Of a stretch of DNA of 64,000 nucleotides, positions 13,820 to 42,045 are shown piece after piece. Position 1 is the first letter of the stretch, and every line of letters starts with the position of its first letter. Position numbers and translations under genes: made by a program. Below the pieces are notes generated by a model. It ran no database searches. It was given only the letters and a program-made list of their open reading frames with translations, and was not told where the DNA came from. The stretch spans positions 186,001 through 250,000 of IMG/VR virus record IMGVR_UViG_3300027963_000035; one strand, given 5' to 3'.

Positions 13820-16202
13820 TTTTGTTTCTATAAAAATATGATGCCCTAATGTAATCAAATTTTCAAATCCCATTCCATCGAGATTAGATGGATCATCTTT
13901 ATATTGCCAGTAGGGGCTGATTTTAGGATCATAAAAAAGTCTATGTCCAGAGGGTTTCACAAAATTATATGAAACCTCAACGTTTTTGCATTGCACCCAT
14001 CCGCAAACATCCCTCTTTTGTTTAGCAAAAACTTTCTCTGCTGTTTTTGATTCATTTTTTAACGTACATCCCATAAGCAATAATTGAACTTTATTGGGAT
14101 CATGATATTCAACTGAATTCGTAATTATGTTGCGAATCTGCCAATGCTTATAATTCTCCCCAGCACCCAAATGAAATCGAACTTTAAGCATAATATTACC
14201 TGGCTTTTTCTTCTTTATTAGATCTTACCGATAAGATTACGATTCTATTATTTAAGATTTCTATATGGTTTACTAATTTATCATTCTGATATTCTAGTTT
14301 CTTATTCTGGTATTCTAAATCACTAATTATGTTTCTATACTTAATGTAATTTTTTTTCTGATTATATATTGTTGTTCTCTGATTGTATATTATTACTCCA
14401 AGGAAGACATAAAATAGAATTCCTATAAATATTGTTATAAAAACTTTATGGAATTTCATGTCCATAAGCTCTTTCTGATTTTGATTAATCTGATCATCAT
14501 ATCTTCATCTTCTTTATCATATTGTTCTTCGATGCTTGTGAGTTTATCGAGACTCTCTCTTATAATCTCTTTATCTTTTATCCTACTCTCGCAGATTTCG
14601 CTCCACTTGCTAATATCGTGAGGATGTTCACGATATGGTCTAACGTTTTTCCACCAATTATAAATTTCTAAGATTTCTTTAGAAGATTCTGCTTGGGGTG
14701 TTGGCTCGCCGTAACCCTCAGTATATTCTTTCTGGTATCCATTTTCTTCATCTTTTTTAAGACCCATCGCCCAATTAAGATATTCGATACCGCCTTCTGC
14801 GGATCTCTTATATTTTCCTCTTTCTTTTTTATCTTTGCTTAGATAATTTATCCAAGAAAGTTCATCTTCCACAAATTCAGATAATTCAGTAAACAAACCA
14901 TAGAGTATCTTTTCATCTACTTCATGATAATGTCCTGGCTCTAGGCCGGTCTTTAAATAATGAGTCTTATCTACAAACCTATTATTTAAATAAGTTTTTA
15001 TGGAATTGTAGAGATCTGACGGGTAAAATATAAAGTCTTGAAGATTGCCAAGAAGAGTATCGGAGAGATAATATCTAATCGGTCTTTTGTTCTCTTGTTC
15101 CTTTCTCCAATCTTCCCAACCTTCCATTGTGAGTCCAAGAGGCTTATCTTCACCTCTAACCCAATTTGCAAATTTGCTACAAGTCCAGTAATTGAATCTG
15201 GTTCTTAACATAGTGAAATTTTCCAAAAAAATTAGTATCGCAGTTCCGTGTAGACCACTGCGTAATGTATATTAAATTTAACTTACACTCTATTGGCTGT
15301 CGATAACCTCAACCCAGTAACAGTATAGTGATCGACCACTATTTTTTTGTTACCAACAAGATAGTATTGTTGTATATACGGGTACTAATTTTTAGTTTGG
15401 AACAACGACCTTTCTTTGAAGTGTTTTTTTGCAATATTCAAACATACGAATTCCACTAATATCTTTGTTGTTTTTCAAGTCAAAGATTCGATAAAGTCTG
15501 TGAGTGCGGTTCTTAAAATTGGAATCTTTTTTTAATTTTTTAGGGCACTTAAAACGAGGCTTGTATAATTTAAGAGAATTATAATAATGACGCAAAACCG
15601 TTTGTTTAAAATGCTCCCTAGCGAAGAACAAGAGATTGGGTTTTTTGTATTTATCATAGTATTCGACTATAGCATAATCCATGCCTCTAACTATAGAAGC
15701 CTTATAGGCATTTAAGACTTTTTCAAGGTCTAGATTATTTTTTAACTGAATATGTGTGTTATTTTTTACGAAATCCAAGAACTCTCCTGTTACAGGAACA
15801 AAAGAACCTAGCATTTTTTCTTTTTTGCTGATTTTGTGCGGCATAGTTCTTTTGCTTTCGACAGTATTTTTTCTATTTCAACTTCAATGAAACTTAACTT
15901 ATCAATTGATTGTCCTGCCACAAAGCCTCTTTTTATTTCTTCTTCTCTATGCTTCTTTGAATATCTCGGACTTATCCAACGATATTGTTCATTTTTTTCA
16001 TAATCCCAAACAGTCATCTCATAAACAGTTTGCTTGTTAGCATCAAAAACCACACCAGTAGAGCAAATAAAATTTTTGCCCCTTTTCTTATCATTTGAGA
16101 TTATGAAAGCATTTTCTCCATAACAATCCCAAAGAAATTCAGCCCCATCAGTAATTGAGTAATTGACACTGATCAGATAATCTTTTAGGGTGATCTTAGT
16201 TT

Positions 16203-22762: not shown

Positions 22763-22765
22763 ACG

Positions 22766-23029
22766 TCCGAAGGGTGGGATTCGAACCCACAGTCTACAAA
22801 TTCAAGTTTGTGTGATTTTCACCACTCCTTGGACTTTGTCTTCACCATATCTTACGATTTAGGTGGTCGCCGTTAAGTCTCTACACGTTCCCTTACGGGC
22901 TTCGCTCGGCATTGCCATATGCTCACGCATTTAGGTTTCACCGAATTTGACGACATCCCATACGAAGTTTCCAATCGTATGGCACGAAAATTCATGAGTT
23001 TGTTGCATTAACCGTTTTGCTACCTTCGG
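22766..23029 (-). tRNA. tRNA with CAU anticodon (probably Ile2, possibly elongator Met) containing a group I intron
   Basis: CCGAAGG/CCTTCGG-A acceptor, ACAAA-CTCAT^AA-TTTGT anticodon arm, GTGGG-TTCGAAT-CCCAC T-arm; 16 nt downstream of tilS. Confidence 0.88.
22803..22993 (-). ncRNA. Group I intron (IC3-like), 191 nt, between tRNA positions 36/37
   Basis: P AAATTCGGTGAAAC, Q GCAATGCCGAGC, R GTAGAGACT, S AAGACAAAGTCC; 5' exon ends in U, terminal G. Confidence 0.88.
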
Positions 23030-27429: not shown

Positions 27430-27716
27430 TGCCAAAGGCGGGGGTCGAACCCGCACAGGATGTTATCCCGAGGGATTTTCTTACCACTATAGTTTTCACT
27501 ACCCTTGCGGTTTGTAGTCTGGACTTTACCTTCACCATAACTTCTCAGTTTTAGGTGCTGCCCGTCAAGTCTCTACACCTTCCTGATTTCTCAGGCTTGG
27601 CTCGGTATTAGCAGTTAAGCCTTCACCGAATTTGAGCAGTTCTGCTCTAAAAGTTTCCTTTTAGGCACTCAATTTAATATCAAGTCCCTTGCGTCTGCCT
27701 ATTTCGCCACTTTGGC
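27430..27716 (-). tRNA. tRNA-Leu(UAA) with group I intron
   Basis: GCCAAAG/CTTTGGC-A, AGGGA-CTT^AAAA-TCCCT, long variable arm, GCGGG-TTCGACC-CCCGC. Confidence 0.92.
27480..27681 (-). ncRNA. Group I intron (IC3-like), 202 nt, after U34
   Basis: P/Q/R/S core, P1 ACTT/GAGT with U-G pair, terminal G; same site as cyanobacterial/plastid trnL(UAA) introns. Confidence 0.9.
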
Positions 27717-27775
27717 TTTTTAAAACCAAACCCAAATAAATTTTCAAAGAACAACCAGCAATCGTCACTCCCTCC

Positions 27776-27795
27776 AACCGTACCGGAGGGAAACT
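27776..27795 (-). promoter_or_regulatory. Conserved promoter-like motif (9)
   Basis: aaccgtaccggagggaaact, about 60 nt upstream of tRNA-Leu. Confidence 0.72.
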
Positions 27796-27868
27796 TGGTT
27801 TTTCACTTTAACACACTTTTAAACTTTTTTCAAGTAGAATTTCTAATACTTTTCTGCATAACTATCAT

Positions 27869-29188
27869 TCATTTTACACCTTTAAGGTAATTTTTATATT
27901 CTTCTAAGAAAATCTTTTCTTCATTCTTTGGATTAGAATTAGAGTGGCCTTTTGCTTGAACAACTTTGTTATTTTTAATTTCAATTGTTACTAGTGGTTT
28001 TTGAATTTCAGAGTTTAACCTTAAAAACAAAATAGTAGAATTCTTATTAGCGATATCTTCGTCATAGCTTGCAACGCAATGATTTAGCTTTATTCCTTCT
28101 TGAATTAAATCCTCGTGTTTAACTGGGGCTATTACGCTATACCTTTCATTTTTATATTCATATTTTTTAAAAGTTTTGCAAACTTTAGAGAACCTATTTT
28201 TAAAAGTTCTACTTTTTAAGACCTCATAATTTTTGCTAGTTATATCATGAAGTGTTTTAAGATATCTTGGATACTTATCAAAATCATTTTTCATTTGAAC
28301 GTTCATTTTTGCATAATCATGAAGAATTGATAATGCATCTTCAATATCTTCAATTCCCTGATTAGGCAACCCCCTGCAAATATAATCTGTTAATTTAAAT
28401 TTGTCATAACCCATCTTTATTAAGATATTAAAATATTCATCGTGCATATCTGGAAACCGATTATAGTTGTCAATTGCATACTTTATCACATCTACATTTT
28501 TAACCTCGCACCACCGTTCCAGAGTTGCATAATCGACTAATCTCATATAATCAGCCGGAACACTACTATATTCAGCAACCATTGTATCTAATTTTTCAAT
28601 ATAGTAATCCAAGCTATACTTTTTAAAATCACTTATAGTTTTAATATTATAATCAAAATAGATTTGTGCGAATTCTAGATGGTGGAATTTTTCTTTATTT
28701 TTTTGTAAAAAGTCCCACTTTGCAAATTTTTCAAAATCCCCCATAATCACAGGATTATTTAAAATACTAAAAAGATCGCTCCTATCAGGTACATAGTAAT
28801 CTTCACGGCTGGTGATAATGAAGAATAACTGAATCCATTCTTCTTTGCACAATTTATAAATATCTTTATCTCTCGCCAATCCAGAAAGATTGCCAGATGC
28901 AAATTTTATACATGACTTAGGATTTTTAATAAGAGTATTTGTCTCTGCGTCATAGAACTTATTATCAATCAGAGAATATTTAACATTTGTTTTGTTGCTA
29001 AAATTAAAAATTAAACTTTTCTTGTCCTCAGACTCACTAACACTTTTCAAGTATTGATAGTGCTTAATTTTTGATTCTTTTTTCTTCTTTTCAGCTAAAT
29101 GTATTTGGTTTATAAGTTCTTTGGTTGTGAAACCATTAACTTGTATAGTTGCTGTTTTCTTGCCATTATTAATTTTGATTGTTCTCAT
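27869..29188 (-). CDS. PcfJ-like domain protein
   Basis: C-terminal LKTLHD...DLIQEGIKLNHCVASY...ILFLR...LVTIEI; start moved to ATG 29188 to exclude the array. Confidence 0.78.
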   Translation of the reverse strand: MRTIKINNGKKTATIQVNGFTTKELINQIHLAEKKKKESKIKHYQYLKSVSESEDKKSLIFNFSNKTNVKYSLIDNKFYDAETNTLIKNPKSCIKFASGNLSGLARDKDIYKLCKEEWIQLFFIITSREDYYVPDRSDLFSILNNPVIMGDFEKFAKWDFLQKNKEKFHHLEFAQIYFDYNIKTISDFKKYSLDYYIEKLDTMVAEYSSVPADYMRLVDYATLERWCEVKNVDVIKYAIDNYNRFPDMHDEYFNILIKMGYDKFKLTDYICRGLPNQGIEDIEDALSILHDYAKMNVQMKNDFDKYPRYLKTLHDITSKNYEVLKSRTFKNRFSKVCKTFKKYEYKNERYSVIAPVKHEDLIQEGIKLNHCVASYDEDIANKNSTILFLRLNSEIQKPLVTIEIKNNKVVQAKGHSNSNPKNEEKIFLEEYKNYLKGVK

Positions 29189-29215
29189 TTTACTTGTTAT
29201 GGACACCCTGTTCGT

Positions 29216-29890
29216 TATTAAAATCAGAGGGTTTTGGTTCACTCTCGCACATTGTTAAAATCGCACAGCTAGGTTCACTAAACCATCATGTTAAATCTTC
29301 TTATTTGGTTCACTCTCGCACATTGTTAAAATACCGGCACTAGGTTCACTCTTCACGCATGTAAAATCAGATTTTATGGTTCACTCGACAACTATGTTAA
29401 AATCGAAGGGCTAGGTTCACTCTTCATCTATGTTAAAATCAAGCAGGTTGGTTCACTCAACTACCTTGTTAAAATATCGAATGATGGTTCACTCACCAAA
29501 TTTGTTAAAATTCCCGACTGTGGTTCACTCCAGAGGTCTGTTTAAATCCGGACATATGGTTCACTCGAATGCGGTGTTAAAATCGCCGTTTGTGATTCAC
29601 TCACTATACATGTAAAATCTCTCACATTGGTTCACTTAACTACCTTGTTGAAATCGTCGGGCTTGGTTCGCTCCGGCAGTATGTAAAAATCCAGTCTGAT
29701 GACTCACTCAACGTTCATGTTAAAATCGTTAATAATGGTTCACTTCTCGTCCTTGTTAAAATCAAGCAGGTTGGTTCACTCCGGCAAAATGAAAAAATCT
29801 GGGCTTCTGGTTCACTCATGGACGCATGTTAAAATCAAGGAAACTGGTTCACTCTTGACTTTTGTTAAAATCTCAGCCACTGGTTCACTC
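29216..29890 (-). repeat. TIGR-like dual-repeat guide-RNA array (36-nt period, 19 units)
   Basis: + strand [TGGTTCACTC]-N8-[TGTTAAAATC]-N8; first box at 29235, 29271, 29306, 29342 ... 29845, 29881; spacers variable. Confidence 0.88.
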
Positions 29891-31831
29891 CAGTTAATTT
29901 TCAACTTGTTCAAAACTCTATACCCAGACTTTAACTTATTGATTATCATTTAGTAAAAGTGTGCATTATTATGCACTTTTTCAATTCTTTTTCAATTTCT
30001 TTAACACTCATTTTGAAATAATGGGATGGTATCTGTAAGTAATCTCCTACAATAAATTCAAAAAGCATTAATTTACCTTTTGAATTTTTTAGATAAATTT
30101 CTAGTGGTGAATCGTAACAACCACTATTGATTAATTCAACTGTCACTAGGGGCGTACCATCGGTTTCTAAATTACCCACGTTATCAACAATCATGTGATT
30201 AGGGGTAAAAGGTTTGTGCTTCCATTTTTCACGATTTCCATTTTCATCAACAACGTCAAAACATTCACATATAACTTTTTTTATTTGATCGATTTGCTTT
30301 TTGGAAGATTTAACTATAGGCTGTGGGTCGTACGCATCCTCTCCGAGTAAACTGAAGGCGGTGCATGAATCACACTCGCACATTTCGGTATAATAAATTT
30401 TATTTAATTTCATTTCTTTGTAACTTTTTCGTCCCTATAAATTTTTGTGACTAATAATAAGATTTAAAAATCACACGCCCCGTCCTCTACAGGATCCATG
30501 TATTCCAGCAAGGGAGTTATTCTATCCTCTGCCATTTCCAGTATTACATCTTCGTCAACGTCTTTTCCTATAACTTTCTTACTTACTATATGAAGATTGT
30601 ATATTTCGTAGAAACAATAACCTTCGCCGTTGTATTCATCGGTTTGTACCGTCAAATCCATTTTTATATCAACCTCGACAAACGAATCTAGGCCGATGAG
30701 AAATTGTAAGTGTATAATTTTGCCGCCCGAAACAAAACCATCTAACTTTCTTTGAATTTTTTGTGTTACGCAAGTGTTGAGAACATCCTTAAAATTTGAT
30801 TTCATAATTATCTTTTAGTCTCCTTGTTGGTCTTGTCGCTATTTCGTGGCTAGAAATCTTTTCCTGTAAATTTTTGCTCGTTCGGCGTCTTTGTTTTTGA
30901 GTCCAGTAGGTACAATTAGTCTACCGTGCCATCCTTCTGGAGCCTTTATATTGGCTTCTACGCACAATCTAAGGACTTTCGGTAGGAGATTACACTCCAA
31001 GCCCCGCAGTTCACCATAGGTGAAGGTAAGGAAAAGGGCTTGTTGCATGATTTTGTGGGCTTCGTGGATTGTTACATCTTTATTTGACAATCTACTTGAT
31101 AAGAGATGTTCTATGTTTCTATCGTATTCTTTTACAAACTCGTCGCACGAAAAGATTATTTTTGCTGCTTTTTTCCTAAAAGATGCGGGTCCGTTTTCAA
31201 AGACGTTAGTTGCCCATGCACGGAGTTTGTTTGCGAGTCTAATTGCTGTGTCCATGTTTCTTCTCAATAAACTGCACGTACCTAGACTTTAACTTATCAA
31301 ATAAAACTATAAGGTTTTAATGAATAAAAAGTTAAAACAACTCCAACATTATAAGCAGAACTTGGATCTGTTTTTATAACCTTAAAAACATTATGATCAA
31401 TTAATTTAAGAACATCTTTTGAGGAAAGACAACGCATACAATTTTTTCCATCAAAAATTCCAACATCATTCTGTTCGACTTTATCTATTTCTATTTGGCA
31501 GAGAAAGTATTCTTCTTCATCTTTAGACATATCAACTAAAAATTTTTCATTTATACTGTTTAGGACATCGCCTAAAGTGAAATCTTTAAAAAAATTTAAC
31601 TTTTTATTCATTGTTTACTTACCCGGACATTGACTTAAACAGTTTTTCAATAATCTGTTACTCTGAGCCACTATTATCTAAACTCTGAAAAAGTGCATCA
31701 ACATCTTCAATACTATATGTGTAGTTAAAATGACCATTATCTTTAGCGTGTTTCATATCTTCTACAAGATTTTCCAAAGCATCCAAGATAATTTCCATAT
31801 CATGCTTTTCAATATAGTAATTCATGTTTTT

Positions 31832-32755
31832 CTACTTCTTCAAATACTCATCAATATCCAAAAGATTTGGCTGAATGATATGATGGGTGTGTCCCAAATG
31901 AGCCATGACATAAGGCTTGGGGCAATCAATTCCTTCAACCTTGCACCAAAGTTCATGGACATTACTCAGGAACAACTTAACCACCCAACGCCTTGCCATA
32001 GCATCCACATGACCATCTGGCAGAATTCCACTCTTATACTTAGCGATAACTTCCTTGTTCTTGAAGTTCTTTGAATTCAAGACAGAATCAGCAAGTTCCT
32101 TGAATCCGCCTTCAAGGTTCTTTTTTACAAGAAACTCCTTCTGGGTCTTGTAAAGCTTACCATAGAAGCACTCCTCCTTACCAGAGAACTTCATGAAACT
32201 CTGCCCGACCTTCCAGCACAGGGTTTTAAGGCTGGCGTTCCAGGGACGCTTTTGACCCTTTTCCCACTTACTTGTGGGATCGAGACCAGCATAACGCCAA
32301 ATAGCACCAGCGGTCTTTGCCTTATTGATGTCAATATGAGCAACAAGACCAGCAGTAATCACAGGACCGATTCCGTAAACCTTATCCTTCAAAATCTTTG
32401 CAATCAAAAAACTATCAGTCCAGTGATCCATAGCCCGTTTGATTTGAGTTTCAAGAACTTCTGTTTGATCGTTCAAGAAACTAAAGAGTTCATGAGGCTC
32501 TTTATCCTTGCCAAAAGCGGTGATCTGATTGGTGCTTCGCTTACGATTCTCTTGAATCATATAATAGTAATCAACAATATACCTCACTTCATCCTTGGTG
32601 AGGGTCTTAATCTTATTAGTGAGATCTTTATTGAGCCTAGCAACAGTCCCAAGACTTGTCAGGCTATCTGGCATTAGGCTATCTGCAATCTTCTTGCTTG
32701 AAATGCCCTTGCCGCAAGTGGGACACTTCTTCTTTGTTACACTTTCCTTTGACAT
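31832..32755 (-). CDS. Nop/IS110 C-terminal-domain protein without nuclease domain (TasA-like)
   Basis: Coiled-coil region then VYGIGPVITAGLVAHID...AIWRYAGLDP...WNASLK...HVDAMARRWVVKLFL; no DEDD/RuvC or HNH domain seen. Confidence 0.8.
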   Translation of the reverse strand: MSKESVTKKKCPTCGKGISSKKIADSLMPDSLTSLGTVARLNKDLTNKIKTLTKDEVRYIVDYYYMIQENRKRSTNQITAFGKDKEPHELFSFLNDQTEVLETQIKRAMDHWTDSFLIAKILKDKVYGIGPVITAGLVAHIDINKAKTAGAIWRYAGLDPTSKWEKGQKRPWNASLKTLCWKVGQSFMKFSGKEECFYGKLYKTQKEFLVKKNLEGGFKELADSVLNSKNFKNKEVIAKYKSGILPDGHVDAMARRWVVKLFLSNVHELWCKVEGIDCPKPYVMAHLGHTHHIIQPNLLDIDEYLKK

Positions 32756-33186
32756 ATTATTTTATCTTTCTATGAAATTATGGGGATCACTACTTCTGCA
32801 AAACGTCCCAGCCCCAAGTATCTGTTCGTTCGGCTGGTGCAACCAAAATAACATCGCTATTGTACTTGTTGCCCTTATGGTCTTGTTCACCCTTGGCTAA
32901 AAGAACCATACAACAAATTACATTACCCGACTTGTTAAACCCATACAGGGGGATTCCGCCCTTGTCGATAGGCTCGTACCATCGTTTGCCGGGAGGCACG
33001 TTGAACGTATTGGTTGTAGTGGGCGTCAATACACGTTCAACATTTCCCTGCCAATTAAGACTCAAGCAGCCGTGACACTGCTCAAGAAGATGAACGTCAC
33101 CAACAACTTCCAAATTACCAATCATTACTTGCTTTTTAGTAACTGTTTTCATGTTTTGTTTCTTTTGTTTTATGGAGACTACTCTC

Positions 33187-33206
33187 AACCGTACCGGAAG
33201 GAAACT
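33187..33206 (-). promoter_or_regulatory. Conserved promoter-like motif (10), upstream of the TasA-like gene and array
   Basis: aaccgtaccggaaggaaact. Confidence 0.72.
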
Positions 33207-33517
33207 TGTTTGTTTTATTATTTGTCAGAATCAGTTAGTTCAATATCTGCCTCAACTGAGTCATCCACGGGGTCGATGCTATGAATATCATAATCACAGG
33301 GAAATCCACCGTGACCCTCCATAACCTCTTCCCACTCAAGTTCAATATCATCATCATTAATCATATCGAGATCAAAGTTATCTTTAATATCTTCTACGCT
33401 ATCTGCAATTACCACAATCGTGGCACGTTCCCTAACACTAGGGACTTCACGCTCAATAGTAATTTCAAATTTAGGCATATTAATTATTTAATGGGAGGTT
33501 TGGGAGGTTCGCTACCC

Positions 33518-34396
33518 TCAAACCGTACCGGAAGGAAACTCGAGTGTTTCAAAAACACTTTCAAGTTCTTCTGATAATCTTCCTTTGATTACTTCGACTG
33601 CATATTGATAAAGAAATTCTGGACTAGTCTTGATGACTTCTTCTGCTTCAATCCATCTTCCTTTAATTACATCTTTAGCGTAACCACAGGCATACTCTGG
33701 ACTAGTTTTTATGGTTTCTTCTGCGTCAACCCAGCGACCTTCGATTACGTCTCTAGCATAATAATAGGCATATCGTGGATCAGTTTTAATAATCCCTTCT
33801 GATTCGATCCATCTGCCTTTAATTATATCTTTGGCGTAAAGATACATATAGTGGATTAAAACCCTCTCAGCTTCAATCCATCTATCTTTTAGGACATCTT
33901 TGGTGTAATAGTAAACATATGCAGGACTAGTTTTAATAATTTTTTCTGCTTCAATCCAGCGATCTTTAATTATATCTCTAGCATAGAGATAGGCATAATA
34001 TGGGTCAGTCTTAATAATCTCTTCTGCTTCATTCCAACGATTTTTAATTACATCTCTGGAATAAAGATAAGCATACTGGGGATCACTCTTGATAATCTCT
34101 TCGCACTCAATCCACCGTCCCTTGATAACATCTTTGGCATAATGATGGATATATTCTGGACGGCTATTCTTTATGATTTCTTCAACTTCAATCCACCGGT
34201 CTTTAATTACATCCCTAGCATAGCAGTAAGCATAATATGGTTCTGTCTTAATAATTGAAAACAAAGCTGTCTTTTGAATATTGTTGGGCTTTTCCCCATT
34301 AATCATAGTTCCATTTTTAATGAAACAATCAACATCCTCATAAGTAACGTTTGAGATGAACTGGTGATATTTTTCTGAGTAACTAGTCATTTTCAC
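33518..34396 (-). CDS. Tandem 24-aa helical repeat protein
   Basis: About 9 copies of IIKTxPxYAYxYARDVIKxRWIEAE. Confidence 0.8.
   Translation of the reverse strand: MKMTSYSEKYHQFISNVTYEDVDCFIKNGTMINGEKPNNIQKTALFSIIKTEPYYAYCYARDVIKDRWIEVEEIIKNSRPEYIHHYAKDVIKGRWIECEEIIKSDPQYAYLYSRDVIKNRWNEAEEIIKTDPYYAYLYARDIIKDRWIEAEKIIKTSPAYVYYYTKDVLKDRWIEAERVLIHYMYLYAKDIIKGRWIESEGIIKTDPRYAYYYARDVIEGRWVDAEETIKTSPEYACGYAKDVIKGRWIEAEEVIKTSPEFLYQYAVEVIKGRLSEELESVFETLEFPSGTV
33521..33540 (-). promoter_or_regulatory. Conserved promoter-like motif (11)
   Basis: aaccgtaccggaaggaaact, forming the last codons of the repeat gene. Confidence 0.7.
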
Positions 34397-34456
34397 CTCA
34401 CAACTCTATTTCAGCTTCAACTTGATAGTCAGATATCATTTTGGTTCTGCTTTTGT

Positions 34457-34645
34457 TTATCCCGGTATTTCACTCTCTAATCTATACAGCATTTCAAACA
34501 AAGGATCAAAATTTCCTTCATTCACTAAATCAATAGGTTTTTTACCGTTAAAAGCTTTATTTGGGGTTTGCAACCAATCGTTTGCATATTCTTCCTTAAC
34601 AATAGAAGATAGCCTTTCTTTGAATTCAGTAAATTTTTCGGTCAT
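34457..34645 (-). CDS. Xre/MbcA/ParS-type antitoxin C-terminal domain protein
   Basis: ANDWLQTPNKAFNGKKPIDLV; start ATG 34645. Confidence 0.72.
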   Translation of the reverse strand: MTEKFTEFKERLSSIVKEEYANDWLQTPNKAFNGKKPIDLVNEGNFDPLFEMLYRLESEIPG

Positions 34646-34664
34646 TGTTTTTTTCTTTGGCCAG

Positions 34665-34764
34665 GGCGAATGGGTGGAATCGAACCACCACAAGGGCATT
34701 TGTTTGCCTACTCTGCTGTCGCAGTTCGGAACTTCCCTCACGCTACCACTACGCTACATTCACC
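34665..34764 (-). ncRNA. tRNA-like RNA with expanded or replaced anticodon domain
   Basis: 8-bp GGTGAATG/CATTCGCC stem, D-loop AGTGGTA, T-arm GGTGG-TTCGATT-CCACC; sigma70-like promoter TTTACA-16-TATACT 7 nt upstream. Confidence 0.65.
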
Positions 34765-35127
34765 ATGATGAGTATAATCAAAAATTTTATTTTGTAAAGA
34801 TCTTCACTTCCTATTATACCTTTTAGTCATGTCAATATTTTTATAACTATCTTTAAGAAGACCTTCAAATATATCAAGTGAACATTCGTAAATTAATGGC
34901 GAAAGAGATAAAATAAAAAGTACAACCATTAATATCGATGCAACTTCTACACCAAATATAAAAATATTAAAAAAATATACTGGAAAAAGTAAAATCATGA
35001 ATAACATAAAGAGTTTAGAAGATCTGTCTCTTCGACGCCATTTCATATTGCATCGAAAATTTTCGTTTTCTTCGATTAAACGGTCTAATTCAGGAACGTC
35101 ACTCATTTTTTGCTCCAAGCTCCATTA

Positions 35128-35240
35128 TTTGGCCGTTATTTTGGCCACTTTCCCGAGCGGGAAATTTTCTAGTATTTTGGCTTAAAATTACCATAAATGT
35201 ACCGAGCGGGAAAATTCACTTTGGCCGTTATTTTGGCCAC
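35128..35240. repeat. Intergenic direct and inverted repeat cluster
   Basis: tttggccgttattttggccac x2 (35128, 35220); ccgagcgggaaa x2 (35153, 35202). Confidence 0.7.
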
Positions 35241-36934
35241 ATCTATGAGGTTTTTAATGTTTTTCCCATTGTTCTCTCGTCCAATTGATATCGTATTTAT
35301 ATTTATGCTTCTTAGCTAGATCTAGGAAATCTTTTATACATACAAATAAATTATAGTGATCACTAGAGTTAACTTGACCCCATAGAGGCAAACCAAAGCA
35401 TTTTGAACTACAGATATCTTTTATTTCTTTTATTTTAAATATGTTACAAACAATATAAATCAATTCAAAATTGCTTTCGTAATAAAATTTTTCTAGGGCA
35501 CCGGTTTTTTTTATTTTGTTAAATTCTTTGAATCTTTTAGCATACTCTAACCTATTTTGCGGCAAAGAAGAGTCAGCAGAAATATTACAAACTCTTTTGC
35601 ACAAAACATGGTTTCTATACTCACTGTTTTTGGAAATTTCTTTCCAAGAATCTTCACCAAATAAAGAAGGTAGTTCGGATTCTTTGACTCCAAAATAAAA
35701 AACCAAAGGTAAATGATTTTTTATTTTAACCTGCTTTAATAGATCTACTGTCTCACTGAGTCTATGAACTTTATCGGCGCTTGGTTTTCTTTTTAAATTA
35801 AAACAAAACTTTGTAAAAAGATATGGGTCTACAACCCAAATCTCCTTCATTTTTGAATTTATGATTTTTCTAGCGGTAGAGGCGGTTATTCCATATTCTT
35901 CTTTAAAAGAACTGTAATTATTTTTTATTAAGTAGGCACGATGTACTTTTGATAAAACATCTTTTTCAACAAAAGAAAAGAGAGGATTTTTAGATTTAAA
36001 TTCTTCTTCAGTTAATTGCTTTTCATGCCAAGGCCGAGAAAGTGATTGAAGCACTAGTTTTGTGCTAAAGTAGAAAAAAGTATCCCATTTGCGAATAACT
36101 TTATTTTTATGAATAGCAACCACAGATTTACCTTCTGTGGTGATTTTGATTTTTTCATCCATGTTATTCCTCTAAAGTAATGTGTTTAGGCCTATTGTTT
36201 CACTTAATTCTTTTCCGTTGCCATCAACAAACTTACAGATTTTATATTTCATTAGTTACTATCCTTTCTCCAAAAAAGAAATTAAATACAATATTGAAAC
36301 GAATGTTGTTCCTTCAACTATAGGAAATAGTGCAAAATAAATGGGGTATTTATTATTAACAAACAAAGACATTATTCCACAAACTAAACAAACTACTGGA
36401 AAACTTAAAAACAAAAATGATACTATATGATTCGATATTTTTTCATTTTTTCGCCCAATGTTAAATCTTAATGATCTTCTTATTGTTTGCTCCATACAAA
36501 AACCCAAATTATATTCATCAAAACTATTGGAAGTGTAAATATTGATGCAAATAGTCCTGCAACTACGATAGATCCAAAACCATCAAAATCATTATGAACC
36601 TCGGGATTACATCCCTCTAATATGCAAAAAATTCCAAAAAACCAAGATATTAATAACGCAAGTTCCATTCCATACATAGGCATAATTGGAGGAAAATCAA
36701 CATTTGTTGGTTTTGTTAACAAGCAAAACAAACAAAACCCAATATATATTAACAAAAAACCCCATACAATTTTTTTCATTTTTTATCCAACTGTTCAGCA
36801 AACTCCCAAGGAACATGATACTTATTATATAAGTCTACTACTCTCTTTGGAATGTATCCTTCATCTTCGCCGTATGCTTTTATTATCTCATGTAACGCTT
36901 CAATAATTTCGTCTTTATTCATAATTAAAACTTT

Positions 36935-37534
36935 TTATTCAATCCAATTATTTTCAATAATTTCATAAATTAAATCTTTTTGCTTGTCAGTAAACTTCCA
37001 TCTTATATTAACATTTTTATCTGCCCAATCTTTGGGATTGCTACCTTTTTCTTTTGACATAGCCATCCAATCTGCACACATTTCTGCAACATCAATGTCT
37101 GGCATCTTTGTTGCATCTACTATTTCTTTGGGTGGCTTATCACGGTTTTCTCTGTTAATTAACCCTGTTTTTGTTGGGCCATGATATTCAGGATGATGCG
37201 AATTGGTTGTTATATGATGTAAAGTAGCCTCTGACATTTTATCTAAAATTTCTTGAGGCACTTTAAATTCTTTATTATCATCTTTGCACTTGTATTGCCA
37301 AGAAATGAAAAGATAAGGAGTATATTCTGGTTCTTCAAATTTACTATCATCATGAACCTTTTTTCGTTCTTTTAGCTCAGAAAACCTATTTGGATCATAC
37401 TCTGCAATTTTATTGCAAAATTTTCCTACTAAATCTATATGGTATTTTGTTCGTTTATCAAAATGATCTTTCATTTCCTGTGTAATCATCTGATTATTTT
37501 TATTTTTATCCAACCATTCGTTGAAATTTTTCAT
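36935..37534 (-). CDS. HD-like phage protein (DUF5662-like)
   Basis: HDDSKF, HHITTNSHHPEYH, EMCADW. Confidence 0.6.
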   Translation of the reverse strand: MKNFNEWLDKNKNNQMITQEMKDHFDKRTKYHIDLVGKFCNKIAEYDPNRFSELKERKKVHDDSKFEEPEYTPYLFISWQYKCKDDNKEFKVPQEILDKMSEATLHHITTNSHHPEYHGPTKTGLINRENRDKPPKEIVDATKMPDIDVAEMCADWMAMSKEKGSNPKDWADKNVNIRWKFTDKQKDLIYEIIENNWIE

Positions 37535-37721
37535 TTTTATTTCCTATTTCATTTATAAGTTATACGTTTATAGTCTGACATCAGAAACAACTTCATAGGT
37601 AGTATGACAAAGTTTCTTTGCTTCTGCAAGTTCTTTTACAATTTCCTTTGAGCGATTATGCCAATAGGTCACATTATTTTTTGCAACATCGGCATTTTCA
37701 TAACGAATAGCATGACAGTTT

Positions 37722-37847
37722 CTCCACAACCAGAAAAATAAAGGATCTTTTTGTTGAACAAAACTCCACAACCAGAAAAATAAAGGATCTTTTTGTTGAA
37801 CAAAACTCCACAACCAGAAAAATAAAGGATATTTTTGTTGAACAAAA
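37722..37847. repeat. 42-bp coding tandem repeat x3
   Basis: Encodes FVQQK(D/Y)PLFFWLW x3 in ORF 37568..38140. Confidence 0.85.
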
Positions 37848-38809
37848 AATCCACGAAATTCTCCATTGCTGTAGTACTGCTCGACAACTCTAAATTTGAT
37901 TTTTTTATAAACTTCTACAACCCTATTTTTAAAGGGTTTAAATATATATTCATTTTTTTGAGCTTCATCAAGAGTAATAGGATAGAAATGACAATCTTTA
38001 TACAGCCAAAAAAATAATGGATTTTGTTTTTGGATAAAATATCCAGTAGATCCAGAGGGATAAATTCTTTTAATAATTCTAGTGCGATTGAACATTTTAT
38101 TTACCTCTTGTAATATGTTGTTTAGTGGTTTAATTTTCATTTTTTTAATATCTCTTTTTTATAATATTCTAGGTATTCAATAGCCCAAATATCTTCTTGC
38201 TTCCACCTGTCGATGTCCGTTTCTTTAGACCAATTTTTATATTCATCTGAGTCGTAGTTTTTATTTTTTAATATATCAATAGCCTGTTCTATTGTTGAGT
38301 TCTTAGAAAATGCACTCATGATCTTACGTGCCGTTCCTCCCCAATGTTTTAAGTTGGGTGTGCTATCTATTCCAAGATGTTCTTCCGCATAGCATTTTGC
38401 ACAAGTTTGAGGCTCATAAACACAATCTCCACAATGACTACTTTGTAGTTCTTCTATAAAATATTTTATAGATTCTTCGTCGTATTTTGTTTCGATAAAT
38501 TTTTCAGAGATATCACGTAATTTATTTTGGATATTATCTAAATTAGTTTCTTTTTTTTCTCTTATATCAAATTCAATCCAAGAAACACTTTCTCCAATCA
38601 TGTCCCATTTGTATTTCCAAAACAATAACTGTTTTTCAGTATCGTCAAGAAATACTTTACTTGCTAATGGGTTTTCATTATATTCTATTTTCATTTTCTA
38701 ATTTCTCAAGCCTTTTGTAAATTTTTTTAAATCTAAAGGCAGTTGCCCAAGAATCTATGTAAAGGTAAGCAATTATCATTATATAAAAATATTTAAATGA
38801 TTCAATCAT

Positions 38810-39160
38810 TTAAATAAATAGGGAAAGATCAATTCCCTTGTCTCTTTCTAAATTATGAGCATAAGCAGTTAAAGTACCGTCTGGCTTTTTGTCATTAATT
38901 AAAATTCTTGAGCCTGTAGGAATTCCGCAAACAATTAGATCAAATTTAAGGTTGTGATATTGAAGAAATTTTTCTATTCTTTCTTTGTCTTCACAAGTTC
39001 GTGCAGTGGTAATAATTACAAAATCTTCTTCTTTTACTATTTCTTCAAAGAAAGATTTTGTAGTTGAAAGAATAAAGTCTTCTGAACTCATGTGGCTTTT
39101 TTGAGTCACAAGAGTGCCATCAAAATCTATGAACCATGTTTTAGGTTGATTTTTAGTCAT
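38810..39160 (-). CDS. HAD-family phosphatase-like protein
   Basis: FIDFDGTL, ITTAR, LINDK. Confidence 0.72.
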   Translation of the reverse strand: MTKNQPKTWFIDFDGTLVTQKSHMSSEDFILSTTKSFFEEIVKEEDFVIITTARTCEDKERIEKFLQYHNLKFDLIVCGIPTGSRILINDKKPDGTLTAYAHNLERDKGIDLSLFI

Positions 39161-40956
39161 TATAATTCCAACATTCTACTTTTTTAATTTGATTTGATTT
39201 ATCAAACCATTTATCTCCTTCAATGTATTTGTTTGCTTCTTCTACATTAGAAAGTTTAAGAATAACTCTATAAGAACGTAGTCCAATTTTTTCAAATGTA
39301 TCCAAATAACGCCAAAATAACCACCCCTTTTTCTTGACTTGATACCATTCTTTTCCGTTACCATCAACAAATTTACAAATTTTGTATTTAGTCACTTTTC
39401 TACCCAGGGTCTTGCGAGTAATAAGCCGGTGTTCGATCATCTTGCAGAAAATCGTATTGCGATGCAATTACAGCAAAATATATCCCTAATGAGCCGTTTT
39501 TTGATCTTCTTCCTTCACAACATCCATAAATATTTTTTTCTAAATCATTGTAAAAATTATACCTCAGTGATTGATCTACAAAATATTTCATTTCTTCTAT
39601 AATGTTTGATTTATGATGATCCATCTTACAAAATGGAATGTAAATATTTAATTTTTTTGCTCTTTCTAGCATTTCAGACTTAGAAATAACACACAAATTT
39701 TTTCCTTTGTATATTGTCTGGTGTTCTTTAGTTCTTAAATATGCACCGTATGAATTTTTAAAAACTAAAATTCCAGCCATTGTTGGCAACAAAGATTTAA
39801 TAAGACTTCTTCTGTTCATTTCTTTTCTCCTTGGTTGTTTTTTTCCATCTCAGAGTTTACTTCACCCTTCAGCATAACTAAATCCAATCTAATATTTTTT
39901 ACATCTTCACTTATTTTGTATGAAATAAAAGTCATTATGAATGCCAACATCATAATGATAATCGTGATAAATAAAATAATTGCTTTAAGTAATTTATCGT
40001 TTTCGTTCATTTCTTGTCTCCGTATATAAATTTCCACTCTGATAAGTCTGTATCAACACCAGCAGCATCCCTAATACCATAAATGGTCTTGGGATCATGG
40101 TCGTATTTATGATTACGAATTTCTTTGGTTATTCTGAAGTTCATAATAGGTTGTGTTCTTTAAGAGTTTGATATAAATTTTTTACTTCTTTTTCGTCCAG
40201 CCTTATTTCGCTGGGGTCAGTATTGTTATAACTAAATACTCTGACCAAGTAAGGTTTATTTTTCAAAAACTCATTATAATGAATCTCAACAATATCATAT
40301 TCAAGATTCAGAGTTCTTACTAGAGTTTGCATTTAAAACTCTTAGCGATATGCCGCTCATTGAACATTGTATATGTCAAATGGGCCAAAGAATCCTCTTT
40401 CTATGATTTGATTGACAAACAATTTAATATCCTCAATAGAAGGGTTTCCTGTTTCATTTTCAACTTCTATTGTTATTAGAGTTTTCATAATTTTTCTTAT
40501 ATTAAAACCTAATCACTTTATAATCATTACCAACTTTACAGTTTATACTTCCATGCAAACCTGGGAGGATGATATTAGCAATGATTAACTCTGCCCCAAT
40601 TACTTTATTCTTACTGTAGACTTCTTGGGCTATTTTAACATCTTCTAAAGAGGCAGGACGAGATCCTCTTTCATTAAAGTCTTTGATAACCTTAGTTCTA
40701 TTCTCATCATTAGAACTTGAGCAATCGTCTAAGATTTTTTCTTCTTCTTCTGAAAACTTTGGAGAAAGTCTTTCAATCCATTTATCATCTATCAAACAAA
40801 GGCATCGTGTCATTTTCCCTCCTTGGAAAAATGTTAGTGGGTGCTAATAGCATACCAGAAATTTTTGTTTCGTCAATAGAAAGTTACATCATGATTGAAT
40901 TTATTTATAAAATTATGGTTCAATGCATATATATAAATATATTAAAGGTTCAAGTC

Positions 40957-41523
40957 ATGAAAGTAAAAGATAAAATATTAGAATTAAGGGCATTGGGATA
41001 TTCATATAAAAAAATCCAAGATGAGATCAAGTGCTCAAAAGGAACAATATCGTATCATTGTGGTGAAGGTCAAAAAGAAAAATACGCCAAAAGACGTAAA
41101 TCAAACAGATCTAAACAGCATCCTTTGATTCGCAAGATTGAAAATTTTATTTATGATAAATACTACAAACCTGTTCCGAAGAATAGGCATATTCATACAT
41201 TGCACAAAAACCTGAAGATAAGGATAGAAGGATTCTCTAGAGTTAACAAGGAGTATGCTGGCATGGAATTTACAATTAAAGATTTTTTAGATAAGGTTGG
41301 AGATAATCCAACATGCTCATTAACTGGAAAACCAATTGATTTAATGAAACCTAGAACATATCAATTGGATCATATAATCCCAAGATCTAAGGGGGGAGAA
41401 AATACTCTAAATAACTGTCAGCTTGTTCTCAAGGAAGTCAATTTAGCAAAACATACTTTAAGCTCAGAAGAGTTTGTTAAATTATGCAGAGAAGTTGTTG
41501 ATTATCACGATAGAAAAAACTAA
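40957..41523 (+). CDS. Free-standing HNH endonuclease with N-terminal HTH
   Basis: YQLDHIIPRSKGGENTLNNCQLVLKEVNLAK; TATAAATA (T4 late-promoter-like) at 40932-40939. Confidence 0.85.
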   Translation: MKVKDKILELRALGYSYKKIQDEIKCSKGTISYHCGEGQKEKYAKRRKSNRSKQHPLIRKIENFIYDKYYKPVPKNRHIHTLHKNLKIRIEGFSRVNKEYAGMEFTIKDFLDKVGDNPTCSLTGKPIDLMKPRTYQLDHIIPRSKGGENTLNNCQLVLKEVNLAKHTLSSEEFVKLCREVVDYHDRKN

Positions 41524-41562
41524 TCAAAGTTTGTAGCTCTTTATATTCAAACCAGCTTGTAG

Positions 41563-41703
41563 CTCCGTGACTTGGATTTGAACCAAGAACCATTCGATTA
41601 ATCCACTGTTTGGGCATTGAACCCAACATAAATTGCCAGCTTTTTTGAGCTTCAATTCAGTGGCTTTTTACAGTCGAACACTCTACCGTTGAGTTATCAC
41701 GGA
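41563..41703 (-). tRNA. tRNA-Asn(GUU) with a 69-nt insert in the anticodon
   Basis: TCCGTGA/TCACGGA-G acceptor, intact D and T arms, TTCGA-CTG[insert]TTAA-TCGAA. Confidence 0.8.
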
Positions 41704-41768
41704 ATAATTAGCACAAAATATTAATAGTAAATACTTTGCACTTTTCTAAACAAAACAAAAAAACAAAA

Positions 41769-42045
41769 TGACCCAGCCAAGGATCGAACTTGGAACCTAC
41801 AGCTTAGCGGTACCACTATAGTTTTCACTACCATTACTGTTTGTGGTCTGGACTTTATCTTCACCATTGTCTTTCAACTTTAGGTGTCGCCTGTTAAGTC
41901 TCTACACCTTCCTAATTGCTTAGGCTTGGCTCGGTATTAGCAGTTAAGCCTTCACCGAATTTAAGCGATTCTACATTAAAGATTTCTCTCTAAGCACTCC
42001 TATTTCACGAAGGCTGTTGCTCTTATCCAATTGAGCTACTGGGCC
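41769..42045 (-). tRNA. tRNA-Arg(UCU) with group I intron
   Basis: GGCCCAG/CTGGGTC-A, ACAGC-CTT^CTAA-GCTGT, CCAAG-TTCGATC-CTTGG. Confidence 0.9.
41808..42009 (-). ncRNA. Group I intron (IC3-like), 202 nt, after U34
   Basis: Core nearly identical to the tRNA-Leu intron; IGS TAGGAG can pair with exon CUU (P1) and CUA (P10); terminal G. Confidence 0.9.

What the first reader, a model, noticed from the sequence alone, without database searches (positions are those of the whole stretch)
27480..42009. Sister group I introns in tRNA-Leu(UAA) and tRNA-Arg(UCU) with retargeted guide sequences
Seen: both are 202 nt, inserted after U34, and share long identical blocks (AAATTCGGTGAAGGCTTAACTGCTAATACCGAGCCAAGCCT; GGTAGTGAAAACTATAGTGGTA). 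Their internal guide sequences differ to fit their exons (TTGAGT vs TAGGAG). Known: classic bacterial tRNA group I introns sit in Leu-UAA, fMet, Ile-CAU and Arg-CCU. Inference: intron transposition between tRNA genes in a phage, with Arg-UCU position 34/35 being an uncommon site; phages may be a reservoir of trnL-type introns.
Basis: partly seen in the sequence, partly recalled or inferred. Interest (0 to 1): 0.7.

Follow-up and report, generated by a model that had tools for sequence, protein, structure and literature searches.

The report
Self-splicing introns hopping between phage tRNAs
A large T4-like freshwater phage carries closely related self-splicing (group I) introns inside the anticodon loops of several of its own tRNA genes, which shows these introns move between tRNA genes and are common in phages, although the intron type and its tRNA-Arg site are already known from bacteria.

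Summary
Two 202-nt group I (IC3) introns sit after U34 in tRNA-Leu(UAA) (27480-27681, minus strand) and tRNA-Arg(UCU) (41808-42009, minus strand), and they share exact 41-nt and 22-nt blocks.

The reading is partly right.
- The same 251-kb T4-like phage contig holds two more such introns: one in tRNA(CAU) at 36/37 (window 22803-22993) and one in tRNA-Gln(UUG) at 34/35 (outside the window).
- The Arg intron's true sister is the Gln intron (91% identity, clade 100/99). It is only 83% identical to the Leu intron. The three are one clade in the best trees, but with weak support.
- The shared blocks are conserved core segments that other phages' Leu introns also carry.
- The 5'-exon part of P1 (C32-U33-U34 paired with GAG) is invariant. 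Retargeting lies in P10: the guide base 5' of GAG covaries with tRNA base 35 across six tRNA species.
- The fold is strongly supported by covariation (96.8% of cells paired, 42 of 62 pairs compensatory).

At least 117 viral contigs carry this intron core. The tRNA-Arg 34/35 type was already catalogued in bacteria (Arg.3Ug, Williams 2020). I found no published description of group I introns in phage tRNA genes. No RNA data show splicing.

The parts
27682..27716 (-). tRNA-Leu(UAA) 5' exon (35 nt), ending in C32-U33-U34
   Evidence: ARAGORN with introns allowed; sequence extracted and checked
27480..27681 (-). Group I (IC3) intron, 202 nt, inserted between U34 and A35 of tRNA-Leu(UAA). Helices: P1 27682-27684/27668-27670; P2 27647-27664; P3 27634-27639/27558-27563; P4 27624-27629/27602-27607; P6 27599-27601/27577-27579; P7 27567-27571/27522-27526; P8 27554-27557/27533-27536; P9 27514-27518/27483-27487. 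The terminal G (omega G) is at 27480.
   Evidence: RF00028 scores 50.8 bits. It keeps 61 of 62 consensus pairs. Helix coordinates come from alignment A2.
27430..27479 (-). tRNA-Leu(UAA) 3' exon (50 nt), starting with A35
27668..27673 (-). Internal guide sequence of the Leu intron, ATTGAG. GAG pairs with C32-U33-U34 (P1). The UU 5' of GAG pairs with A35-A36 (P10).
42010..42045 (-). tRNA-Arg(UCU) 5' exon (36 nt), ending in C32-U33-U34
41808..42009 (-). Group I (IC3) intron, 202 nt, inserted between U34 and C35 of tRNA-Arg(UCU). Helices: P1 42010-42012/41997-41999; P2 41976-41993; P3 41963-41968/41887-41892; P4 41953-41958/41931-41936; P6 41928-41930/41906-41908; P7 41896-41900/41851-41855; P8 41883-41886/41862-41865; P9 41843-41847/41812-41816. 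The terminal G (omega G) is at 41808.
   Evidence: RF00028 scores 59.3 bits. It keeps 61 of 62 consensus pairs.
41769..41807 (-). tRNA-Arg(UCU) 3' exon (39 nt), starting with C35
   Evidence: The ligated anticodon arm (a 25-mer) is exact in at least 119 intronless viral tRNA-Arg genes. The best whole-tRNA identity is 68 of 75.
41997..42002 (-). Internal guide sequence of the Arg intron, TAGGAG. GAG pairs with C32-U33-U34 (P1). The UAG 5' of GAG pairs with C35-U36-A37 (P10).
22765..23029 (-). A third interrupted gene that the finding missed: tRNA(CAU) (elongator Met or Ile2), with a 191-nt Azoarcus-type group I intron at 22803-22993, inserted after U36. Its guide GUG pairs with C34-A35-U36.
   Evidence: RF00028 scores 59.2 bits. 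It clusters with another viral CAU intron, L057 (100/90).

Best explanation
The two elements are small, endonuclease-free group I introns of subgroup IC3. They interrupt the anticodon loops of phage-encoded tRNA-Leu(UAA) and tRNA-Arg(UCU) after U34. They belong to a set of four tRNA introns in one T4-like freshwater phage; the other two lie in tRNA-Gln(UUG) and tRNA(CAU).

Inferred mechanism, taken from the known chemistry of this family:
- The pre-tRNA folds so that C32-U33-U34 pairs with the guide GAG (P1, with a U34-G wobble).
- An external guanosine cuts after U34.
- The guide bases just 5' of GAG then pair with tRNA bases 35-37 (P10).
- The terminal G enters the P7 site and the exons are joined into a normal tRNA.

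Inferred history: a Leu-type intron lineage that circulates mainly among phages has repeatedly moved into other tRNA genes that offer the same C-U-U at positions 32-34. The most likely route is reverse splicing into the tRNA, followed by copying back into DNA. After each move only the P10 guide bases were adjusted to the new anticodon. In this genome the Arg and Gln copies are the most recent pair.
For: Identity as group I introns:
- RF00028 reaches the gathering score for all four introns: 68.6, 59.3, 59.2 and 50.8 bits.

Fold, on 39 related viral introns:
- 96.8% of cells are paired and 42 of 62 pairs show compensatory changes.
- The covariation score is 0.527, against 0.163 for shuffles and at most 0.095 for slid partners.
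- P7 is confirmed by a pair that switches between A-U (21 sequences) and U-A (18).
- This genome's copies keep 61-62 of the 62 pairs.

Splice sites:
- P1 CUU/GAG is invariant in all 39 introns.
- The P10 pair between guide position -1 and tRNA base 35 is U-A in 27, G-C in 6, G-U in 3, C-G in 1, and unpaired in 2.
- That pair tracks Leu, Arg, Gln, Lys, Thr and a UCA tRNA.
- The same rule holds in the bacterial seed sequences of Williams 2020.
- The joined Arg exons recreate an anticodon arm found exactly in at least 119 intronless viral tRNA-Arg genes.
- Intronless homologues are 91% identical over the whole tRNA.

Movement between genes:
- The introns are 82-91% identical, while their host tRNAs are 56-65% identical.
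- Arg and Gln form a clade with 100/99 support.
- A single clade of all Arg(UCU) introns is rejected (p-AU 0.0003).
- The three own 34/35 introns form one clade in the best trees and sit inside an all-viral clade (94/92).

Phage origin:
- The contig encodes a Gp23-type capsid protein (300 bits), a terminase, and rIIA/rIIB.
Against: - No RNA evidence of splicing exists. No public RNA run holds this phage, and only relatives' introns were seen.
- P1 of the Arg intron is short, about 4 bp.
- P5 of the sister introns is cut down to 2-3 bp and lacks the tetraloop receptor seen in Azoarcus, so efficient self-splicing without helper proteins is not assured.
- The donor and the direction of transfer are unresolved. 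The three-intron clade has only 68/76 support, and a clade of the two Gln introns plus Arg is not rejected (p 0.22-0.35).
- Gene conversion between copies in one genome could mimic recent transposition.
- Reverse splicing is inferred only from the shared CUU target and the absence of an endonuclease ORF. A related huge-phage tRNA-Leu intron does carry an HNH ORF, so DNA-level homing exists in the family.
Confidence: 0.8

Rival explanations
1. Separate horizontal acquisitions. Each intron arrived with, or from, an already adapted intron of the same tRNA type in another phage or bacterium, with no movement between tRNA genes inside this phage lineage.
For: - Arg(UCU), Gln(UUG) and Leu(UAA) introns at 34/35 all exist in other viral contigs.
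- By identity, the Leu intron is closer to other phages' Leu introns (89%) than to the Arg intron (83%).
- L024 has a near-identical tRNA-Gln with an intron at the same site.
- A clade of both Gln introns plus Arg is not rejected (p 0.22-0.35).
Against: - The Arg intron's nearest relative is the Gln intron of the same genome (91%, support 100/99), so at least one switch of tRNA type is needed.
- Monophyly of all Arg introns is rejected (p 0.0003).
- The other Arg introns sit in different parts of the tree.
Confidence: 0.15
2. Concerted evolution. The introns are old residents of their tRNA genes, and their similarity within this genome comes from gene conversion between copies and not from recent transposition.
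For: The pattern is mosaic. The P4-P6 block of the Arg intron is identical to the Leu intron, while the rest is closest to the Gln intron. The three-intron clade is only weakly supported.
Against: The 41-nt block is also exact in the Leu introns of L017 and L060, so the identity can be plain core conservation. Conversion would still need an earlier transposition to place homologous introns in three different tRNAs.
Confidence: 0.15
3. Duplication of a whole interrupted tRNA gene, followed by remoulding of the exons to a new tRNA identity.
For: All three introns are 202 nt long and sit at the same loop position.
Against: The exons are only 56-65% identical, which is the background level between unrelated tRNAs, while the introns are 82-91% identical. 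The ligated Arg exons are 91% identical to intronless tRNA-Arg genes of other phages.
Confidence: 0.03
4. The interrupted genes are dead: decaying introns in pseudo-tRNAs.
For: No expression data exist. The same genome has two tRNA genes with odd short inserts.
Against: The copies keep 61-62 of 62 consensus pairs, the U-G wobble, the terminal G and a matched P10. The exons give canonical cloverleaves. A relative about 95% identical, in another sample, keeps the Arg intron.
Confidence: 0.05

Closest known systems
[quoted passage not shown]
   Same: It has the same insertion site (between U34 and A35), the same CUU/GAG P1 with a U-G wobble, the same core sequence motifs, and no ORF. The window's Leu intron is a plain member of this class.
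   Different: The host here is a T4-like phage and not a cell. The intron is shorter (202 nt) with a minimal P5. In my tree it lies in an all-viral clade, apart from the sampled bacterial Leu introns.
Arg.3Ug class of bacterial tRNA introns (Williams 2020 preprint), and the tRNA-Arg-TCT introns reported in Beggiatoa BOGUAY and Thiomargarita
   Same: [quoted passage not shown]
   Different: Those are bacterial; the survey covered bacterial and archaeal assemblies only. The exact site in the sulfur bacteria could not be read, because the paper is not held. The two bacterial Arg(UCU) introns in my own sample sit at 36/37 and not 34/35.
Azoarcus tRNA-Ile(CAU) intron (Ile2.5Ug), the structural model of IC3 introns
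   Same: The window's third intron (22803-22993) matches it element by element. It is inserted after U36, has a GUG guide, carries GAAA loops on P2 and P9, and has CCUAA...UAUGG receptor motifs in P5 and P8.
   Different: It is 191 nt long and phage-borne. The three 34/35 sister introns differ more from Azoarcus, in their site, their guide, their truncated P5 and their branched P9.
Proposed transposition of tRNA introns between tRNA-Ile(CAU) and tRNA-Arg(CCU) in proteobacteria (Paquin, Heinfling and Shub 1999; cited from my own knowledge and not read here)
   Same: It is the same idea: one IC3 intron lineage occupying different tRNA genes at the same loop position.
   Different: Here the paralogous copies lie in a single genome, at 34/35, and the retuning of P10 can be followed across six tRNA species.

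Membership tests
Group I intron (Rfam RF00028) | The covariance-model score reaches the curated gathering score of 50 bits | tested here: met
   Scores are Arg 59.3, CAU 59.2, Leu 50.8 and Gln 68.6 bits. The Leu intron only just passes, and it was not listed in the whole-window scan.
Group I intron | The 5' splice site follows a U that forms a U-G wobble with the internal guide in P1 | tested here: met
   U34 pairs with the first G of GAG in all 39 aligned introns, with no exception.
Group I intron | The intron ends in G (omega G), and the 3' exon pairs with the guide (P10) | tested here: met
   The terminal G falls in one alignment column. In P10, 83.8% of cells are paired, and all 3 pairs show changes on both sides that follow the anticodon.
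Group I intron | A conserved P3-P9 core, including the P3/P7 pseudoknot, supported by covariation | tested here: met
   42 of 62 pairs are compensatory; the score is 0.527 against 0.163 for shuffles; P7 has an A-U/U-A switch.
Group I intron | Self-splicing with guanosine and Mg2+ | not testable with these tools
   No RNA run holds this phage. An in vitro assay is needed.
Subgroup IC3 tRNA introns | The intron lies in the anticodon loop, so that the ligated exons give a canonical tRNA | tested here: met
   ARAGORN gives cloverleaves. The ligated Arg anticodon arm is exact in at least 119 intronless viral genes, and whole-tRNA identity reaches 68 of 75.
Subgroup IC3 tRNA introns | Peripheral tetraloop-receptor contacts: L2 GAAA with a P8 receptor, and L9 GAAA with a P5 receptor | tested here: inconclusive
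   GAAA loops on P2 and P9b and a CCUAAA...(U/A)AUGG motif in P8 are present. P5 of the sister introns is only 2-3 bp and shows no receptor. The CAU intron has both receptors.
Leu.3Ug and Arg.3Ug classes (Williams 2020) | Intron at loop position 3 (after nucleotide 34), with U at -1 and G at omega, in tRNA-Leu or tRNA-Arg | tested here: met
   compared with the seed alignment.
Mobile group I intron with a homing endonuclease | An endonuclease ORF inside the intron | tested here: not met
   The introns are 191-202 nt and leave no room for an ORF. A related 700-nt tRNA-Leu intron in huge phage LR756511 does carry an HNH-type ORF.

The most novel reading that the evidence does not exclude
Phage tRNA gene sets, and not only bacterial chromosomes, may be a main home of IC3 introns. 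In that view, an endonuclease-free lineage spreads by reverse splicing into any tRNA that shows C32-U33-U34, and then retunes only its P10 guide. In this phage, six of eleven tRNA genes are interrupted in the anticodon loop. Two of them (tRNA-Asn and tRNA-Gly) carry short 69-nt and 27-nt inserts that are not group I introns and match no known RNA family. Those inserts would need an undescribed way of removal.
Probability: 0.25. Interest if true: 0.7.

Novelty: new member of a known kind. Interest (0 to 1): 0.45.

Why it matters
A 2014 review stated that every phage group I intron known then lay in a protein-coding gene, despite the many phage tRNA genes. I found no later paper that describes group I introns in phage tRNA genes.

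Here one phage has four such introns. At least 117 viral contigs carry the same core, and so does the cultured jumbo phage Atu_ph07.

The set of paralogous copies gives a clean natural experiment on how a ribozyme changes target. The 3-nt 5' recognition (CUU) is kept, and only the P10 guide bases change with the anticodon.

This has three practical consequences:
- Intron transposition by reverse splicing becomes testable with very small ribozymes of 184-202 nt.
- Phage tRNA counts are probably underestimated, because standard tRNA finders miss these genes.
- Phages become a plausible vehicle for the patchy spread of tRNA introns among bacteria.

Tried and rejected
- RNA evidence. Two searches for sequencing runs and two read layings found the phage only in freshwater DNA runs. 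The RNA runs held only relatives' intron cores (under 90% identity), so splicing could not be observed. No intronless allele appeared as a DNA joint.
- ARAGORN's call of tRNA-SeC(UCA) for the fourth gene. I rejected it because it needs an A at -1. The homologous ends, the U-G wobble, a 3-bp P10 and a U1-A72 pair fit tRNA-Gln(UUG).
- ARAGORN's 12 'tRNA-Tyr(AUA)' calls in viral loci. These are really Leu(UAA) at 34/35.
- The Microcoleus phage 'tRNA-Arg'. I took it for a UCU case, but it is Arg(CCU) at 36/37.
- The short inserts of tRNA-Asn and tRNA-Gly:
  - No Rfam family matches even at E up to 10.
  - There is no repeat of them in the genome.
  - No other IMG/VR or JGI contig holds the Asn insert.
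  - RtcB, splicing endonuclease and RNA ligase families are absent from the 251-kb fragment.
  - A screen for short-insert tRNAs in other viral loci gave mostly chimeras of neighbouring tRNAs.
- An intronless tRNA-Gln junction. It was not found in IMG/VR.
- MacGregor 2013, needed for the site of the Beggiatoa Arg intron, is not held.
- The table of 21 types in Williams 2020 is an image, so I cannot say whether Gln.3Ug is listed. It is absent from the seed alignment.


Full report
**What is there**

The window is bases 186001-250000 of a 251,265-bp IMG/VR virus record (35.7% G+C; CheckV estimates about 50% completeness). The record is a phage:
- It encodes a T4-type major capsid protein (Pfam Gp23, 300 bits) and a large terminase.
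- Inside the window it encodes rIIA, rIIB, an HNH endonuclease and other PHROG families.
- Only freshwater and lake DNA runs hold it.

**The observation**

Both claimed blocks are exact, occur only at the two stated places, and are not expected by chance. With introns allowed, ARAGORN finds two interrupted genes:
- tRNA-Leu(UAA): exons 27682-27716 and 27430-27479, interrupted by 202 nt at 27480-27681.
- tRNA-Arg(UCU): exons 42010-42045 and 41769-41807, interrupted by 202 nt at 41808-42009.

Both genes are on the minus strand and both introns follow U34. Rfam's group I model scores the Arg intron at 59.3 bits and the Leu intron at 50.8 bits, against a gathering score of 50.

**What the finding missed**

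The same genome has two more group I introns.
- One is in the window: 191 nt at 22803-22993, in a tRNA(CAU), inserted after U36 with a GUG guide. This is the layout of the Azoarcus tRNA-Ile intron.
- The other is outside the window, at genome 144319-144520. It is 202 nt and scores 68.6 bits.

ARAGORN calls the host of the second one tRNA-SeC(UCA). That call needs an A before the splice site. The ends homologous to the other introns, the U-G wobble, a 3-bp P10 and a U1-A72 pair all fit tRNA-Gln(UUG) with the intron after U34.

**The fold**

I collected relatives by scanning IMG/VR for a degenerate core pattern. I mapped the exons with ARAGORN plus a U(-1)/G(omega) rule.

I aligned 39 introns of the 34/35 class, each with 10 nt of exon on either side. 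The results are as follows:
- RNAalifold recovers the anticodon stem, P2, P3, P4, P5, P6, P6a, P8 and P9.
- After adding P1, P7 and P10 as named pairs, 96.8% of cells are standard pairs.
- 42 of 62 pairs show changes on both sides.
- The covariation score is 0.527. Column shuffles give 0.163, and partners slid by 1-3 columns give at most 0.095.
- P7 is confirmed by a pair that is A-U in 21 sequences and U-A in 18.
- The three copies of this genome keep 61, 62 and 61 of the 62 pairs.

These are intact members of a constrained ribozyme family.

**The guide sequence**

- In all 39 introns the 5' exon ends in C32-U33-U34, and these three bases pair with an invariant GAG. That part of the guide is not retargeted.
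- What changes is the base just 5' of GAG, which pairs with tRNA base 35 in P10:
  - U with A35 in Leu.
  - G with C35 in Arg and in a UCA tRNA.
  - G with U35 in Gln and Lys.
  - C with G35 in Thr.
- Counts for this pair are U-A 27, G-C 6, G-U 3, C-G 1 and unpaired 2.
- The next two guide bases follow bases 36 and 37 less strictly.
- In the window, ATTGAG serves A35-A36 and TAGGAG serves C35-U36-A37.
- The bacterial seed sequences of Williams 2020 obey the same rule.

**The splice junction**

The joined Arg exons recreate a 25-nt anticodon-arm sequence that is exact in at least 119 uninterrupted viral tRNA-Arg(UCU) genes. The closest of those genes is 68 of 75 identical over the whole tRNA.

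**Relationships**

- The introns are 82-91% identical to each other. Their host tRNAs are 56-65% identical, which is the level between unrelated tRNAs. Whole-gene duplication is therefore unlikely, and the introns moved.
- The Arg intron is closest to the Gln intron of the same genome (91% identity; clade 100/99). It is 83% identical to the Leu intron.
- By identity, the Leu intron is nearer to Leu introns of other phages (89%).
- The three own introns form one clade in the best tree of both data sets, but the support is weak: 68/76, and in the second set the constrained tree scores better than the free search.
- A clade of both known Gln introns plus Arg is not rejected either (p 0.22-0.35), so the donor and the direction stay open.
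- Forcing all nine Arg(UCU) introns into one clade is rejected (p-AU 0.0003). This tRNA was therefore entered more than once.
- With 48 bacterial 34/35 introns added, viral and bacterial labels need only 5 changes on 96 tips. This phage's trio sits in a 9-member all-viral clade (94/92).
- The bacterial sample was cut at 120 rows and is poor in cyanobacteria. 'Phage reservoir' is therefore supported as a pattern and is not proven as an origin.

**The identical blocks**

The 41-mer is also exact in the Leu introns of L017 and L060, and the 22-mer occurs in 29 of 67 introns. The blocks reflect core conservation (P4-P6 and P9) and are not a special tie between the two window introns.

**How it most likely works**

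What is shown is the anatomy: a U-G wobble, an omega G, a G-binding P7, a matched P10, and intact exons. The rest is inferred:
- The standard two-step guanosine-initiated splicing.
- Spread by reverse splicing into tRNAs that show CUU at positions 32-34. This fits three facts. The same loop position is used in six different tRNAs. The introns hold no ORF. Three other CUU-bearing tRNAs of this genome (Thr, Lys, Glu) remain uninterrupted.

DNA-level homing also exists in the family. The 700-nt tRNA-Leu intron of huge phage LR756511 carries an HNH-type ORF.

No RNA evidence is available. The RNA runs found held only other organisms' intron cores. A relative about 95% identical, in another lake sample, keeps the Arg intron.

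**Comparison with what is known**

- The Leu intron is an ordinary member of the classical Leu.3Ug class.
- The Arg site is not new. Williams (bioRxiv 2020) raised the four classical bacterial types to 21, and his seed alignment contains Arg.3Ug, Lys.3Ug, Thr.3Ug and Ser.3Ug.
- That survey covered bacterial and archaeal assemblies only.
- A 2014 review states that all phage introns then known were in protein-coding genes. My literature searches found no description of group I introns in phage tRNA genes.
- In GenBank phages the genes are present but mostly unannotated:
  - Atu_ph07: tRNA-Leu with a 278-nt intron.
  - LR756501: tRNA-Leu with a 205-nt intron.
  - LR756511: tRNA-Leu with a 700-nt intron.
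  - Microcoleus phage My-WqHQDG: a 286-nt gene annotated 'tRNA-Arg', which is Arg(CCU) interrupted at 36/37.

**Verdict**

Interest is moderate for three reasons: four paralogous copies in one phage, a clear natural record of P10 retuning, and evidence that phage tRNA genes are a large pool of such introns. Gln(UUG) may be an unlisted host tRNA. I could not check that against the image-only table of the 2020 preprint.

**Side observation**

Two further tRNA genes of this phage carry short inserts in the anticodon loop that are not group I introns and that I could not explain. They are listed under things noticed in passing.

Noticed in passing
window 22765-23029 (minus strand): A third interrupted gene: tRNA(CAU) with a 191-nt Azoarcus-type group I intron (22803-22993) after U36 and a GUG guide. 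RF00028 scores 59.2 bits. It was not part of the finding.
   Followed up: yes
outside the window: genome C1:144281-144554 (locus L001), minus strand: A fourth interrupted gene: tRNA-Gln(UUG), which ARAGORN miscalls as SeC(UCA). It has a 202-nt intron after U34 (genome 144319-144520; RF00028 68.6 bits). This intron is the closest relative (91%) of the window's Arg intron. An uninterrupted tRNA-Thr(UGU) lies 12 nt upstream.
   Followed up: yes
window 41562-41703 (minus strand): tRNA-Asn(GUU) scores 53.8 bits as a tRNA but carries a 69-70-nt insert in the anticodon loop (about 41601-41669, at 34/35 or 35/36). The insert folds into a Y shape with a T-arm-like hairpin and matches no Rfam family. 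It is single-copy in the genome and absent from other IMG/VR and JGI contigs. A relative about 95% identical keeps it, with matching changes on both strands of the acceptor stem. How it is removed is unknown.
   Followed up: partly
window 34664-34763 (minus strand): A tRNA-Gly(UCC)-like gene (38.2 bits) with a 27-nt insert near position 37/38 (Rfam reads it as a 38-nt loop). Its predicted fold is no better than shuffled sequence (z -1.1), so it may be a tRNA-like element or a broken gene. In all, 6 of 11 tRNA genes of this contig are interrupted in the anticodon loop.
   Followed up: partly
L123 1495-1856 (MF403008.1 complement 112890-113251): The cultured jumbo phage Atu_ph07 of Agrobacterium has an unannotated tRNA-Leu(UAA) gene with a 278-nt group I intron after U34, lying between annotated hypothetical-protein genes. 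It is a ready laboratory system for testing phage tRNA splicing.
   Followed up: partly
L245 368-1154 (LR756511.1, about 409169-409955): A 595-kb huge phage has tRNA-Leu(UAA) with a 700-nt group I intron. The P6 region of the intron holds an ORF with an HNH-type motif, so it is a possible mobile form of this intron family.
   Followed up: no
L028 (IMGVR_UViG_3300035698_011250), around 14235-14480: A tRNA with anticodon UCA and a long variable arm (Sec-like or an opal suppressor) is interrupted after U34 by a 226-nt group I intron with a matched P10. This may bear on stop-codon recoding in phages.
   Followed up: no
loci L124-L243 (genome contigs): The same intron core occurs in tRNA genes of many bacterial phyla: Pseudomonadota, Acidobacteriota, Nitrospirota, Bacteroidota, Saccharibacteria and others. 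Hosts include Ser(UGA) at 34/35, CAU tRNAs at 33/34 and 36/37, and Arg(UCU) at 36/37 in Vibrio agarilyticus and an Anaerolineae MAG.
   Followed up: partly
L026 (IMGVR_UViG_3300021400_000113), 639-761, 4520-4648, 9989-10179, 3148-3722: A phage tRNA array in which tRNA-Thr(GGU), tRNA-Tyr(GUA) and tRNA-Thr(UGU) carry anticodon-arm inserts of 49, 47 and 116 nt that are not group I introns, yet keep good acceptor and anticodon stems. The array also holds a ROOL RNA (323 bits).
   Followed up: no
window 31832-32755 (minus strand): A 307-aa ORF matches a PHROG transposase family (phrog_4285, E 2.5e-36). It lies between the interrupted tRNA genes.
   Followed up: no
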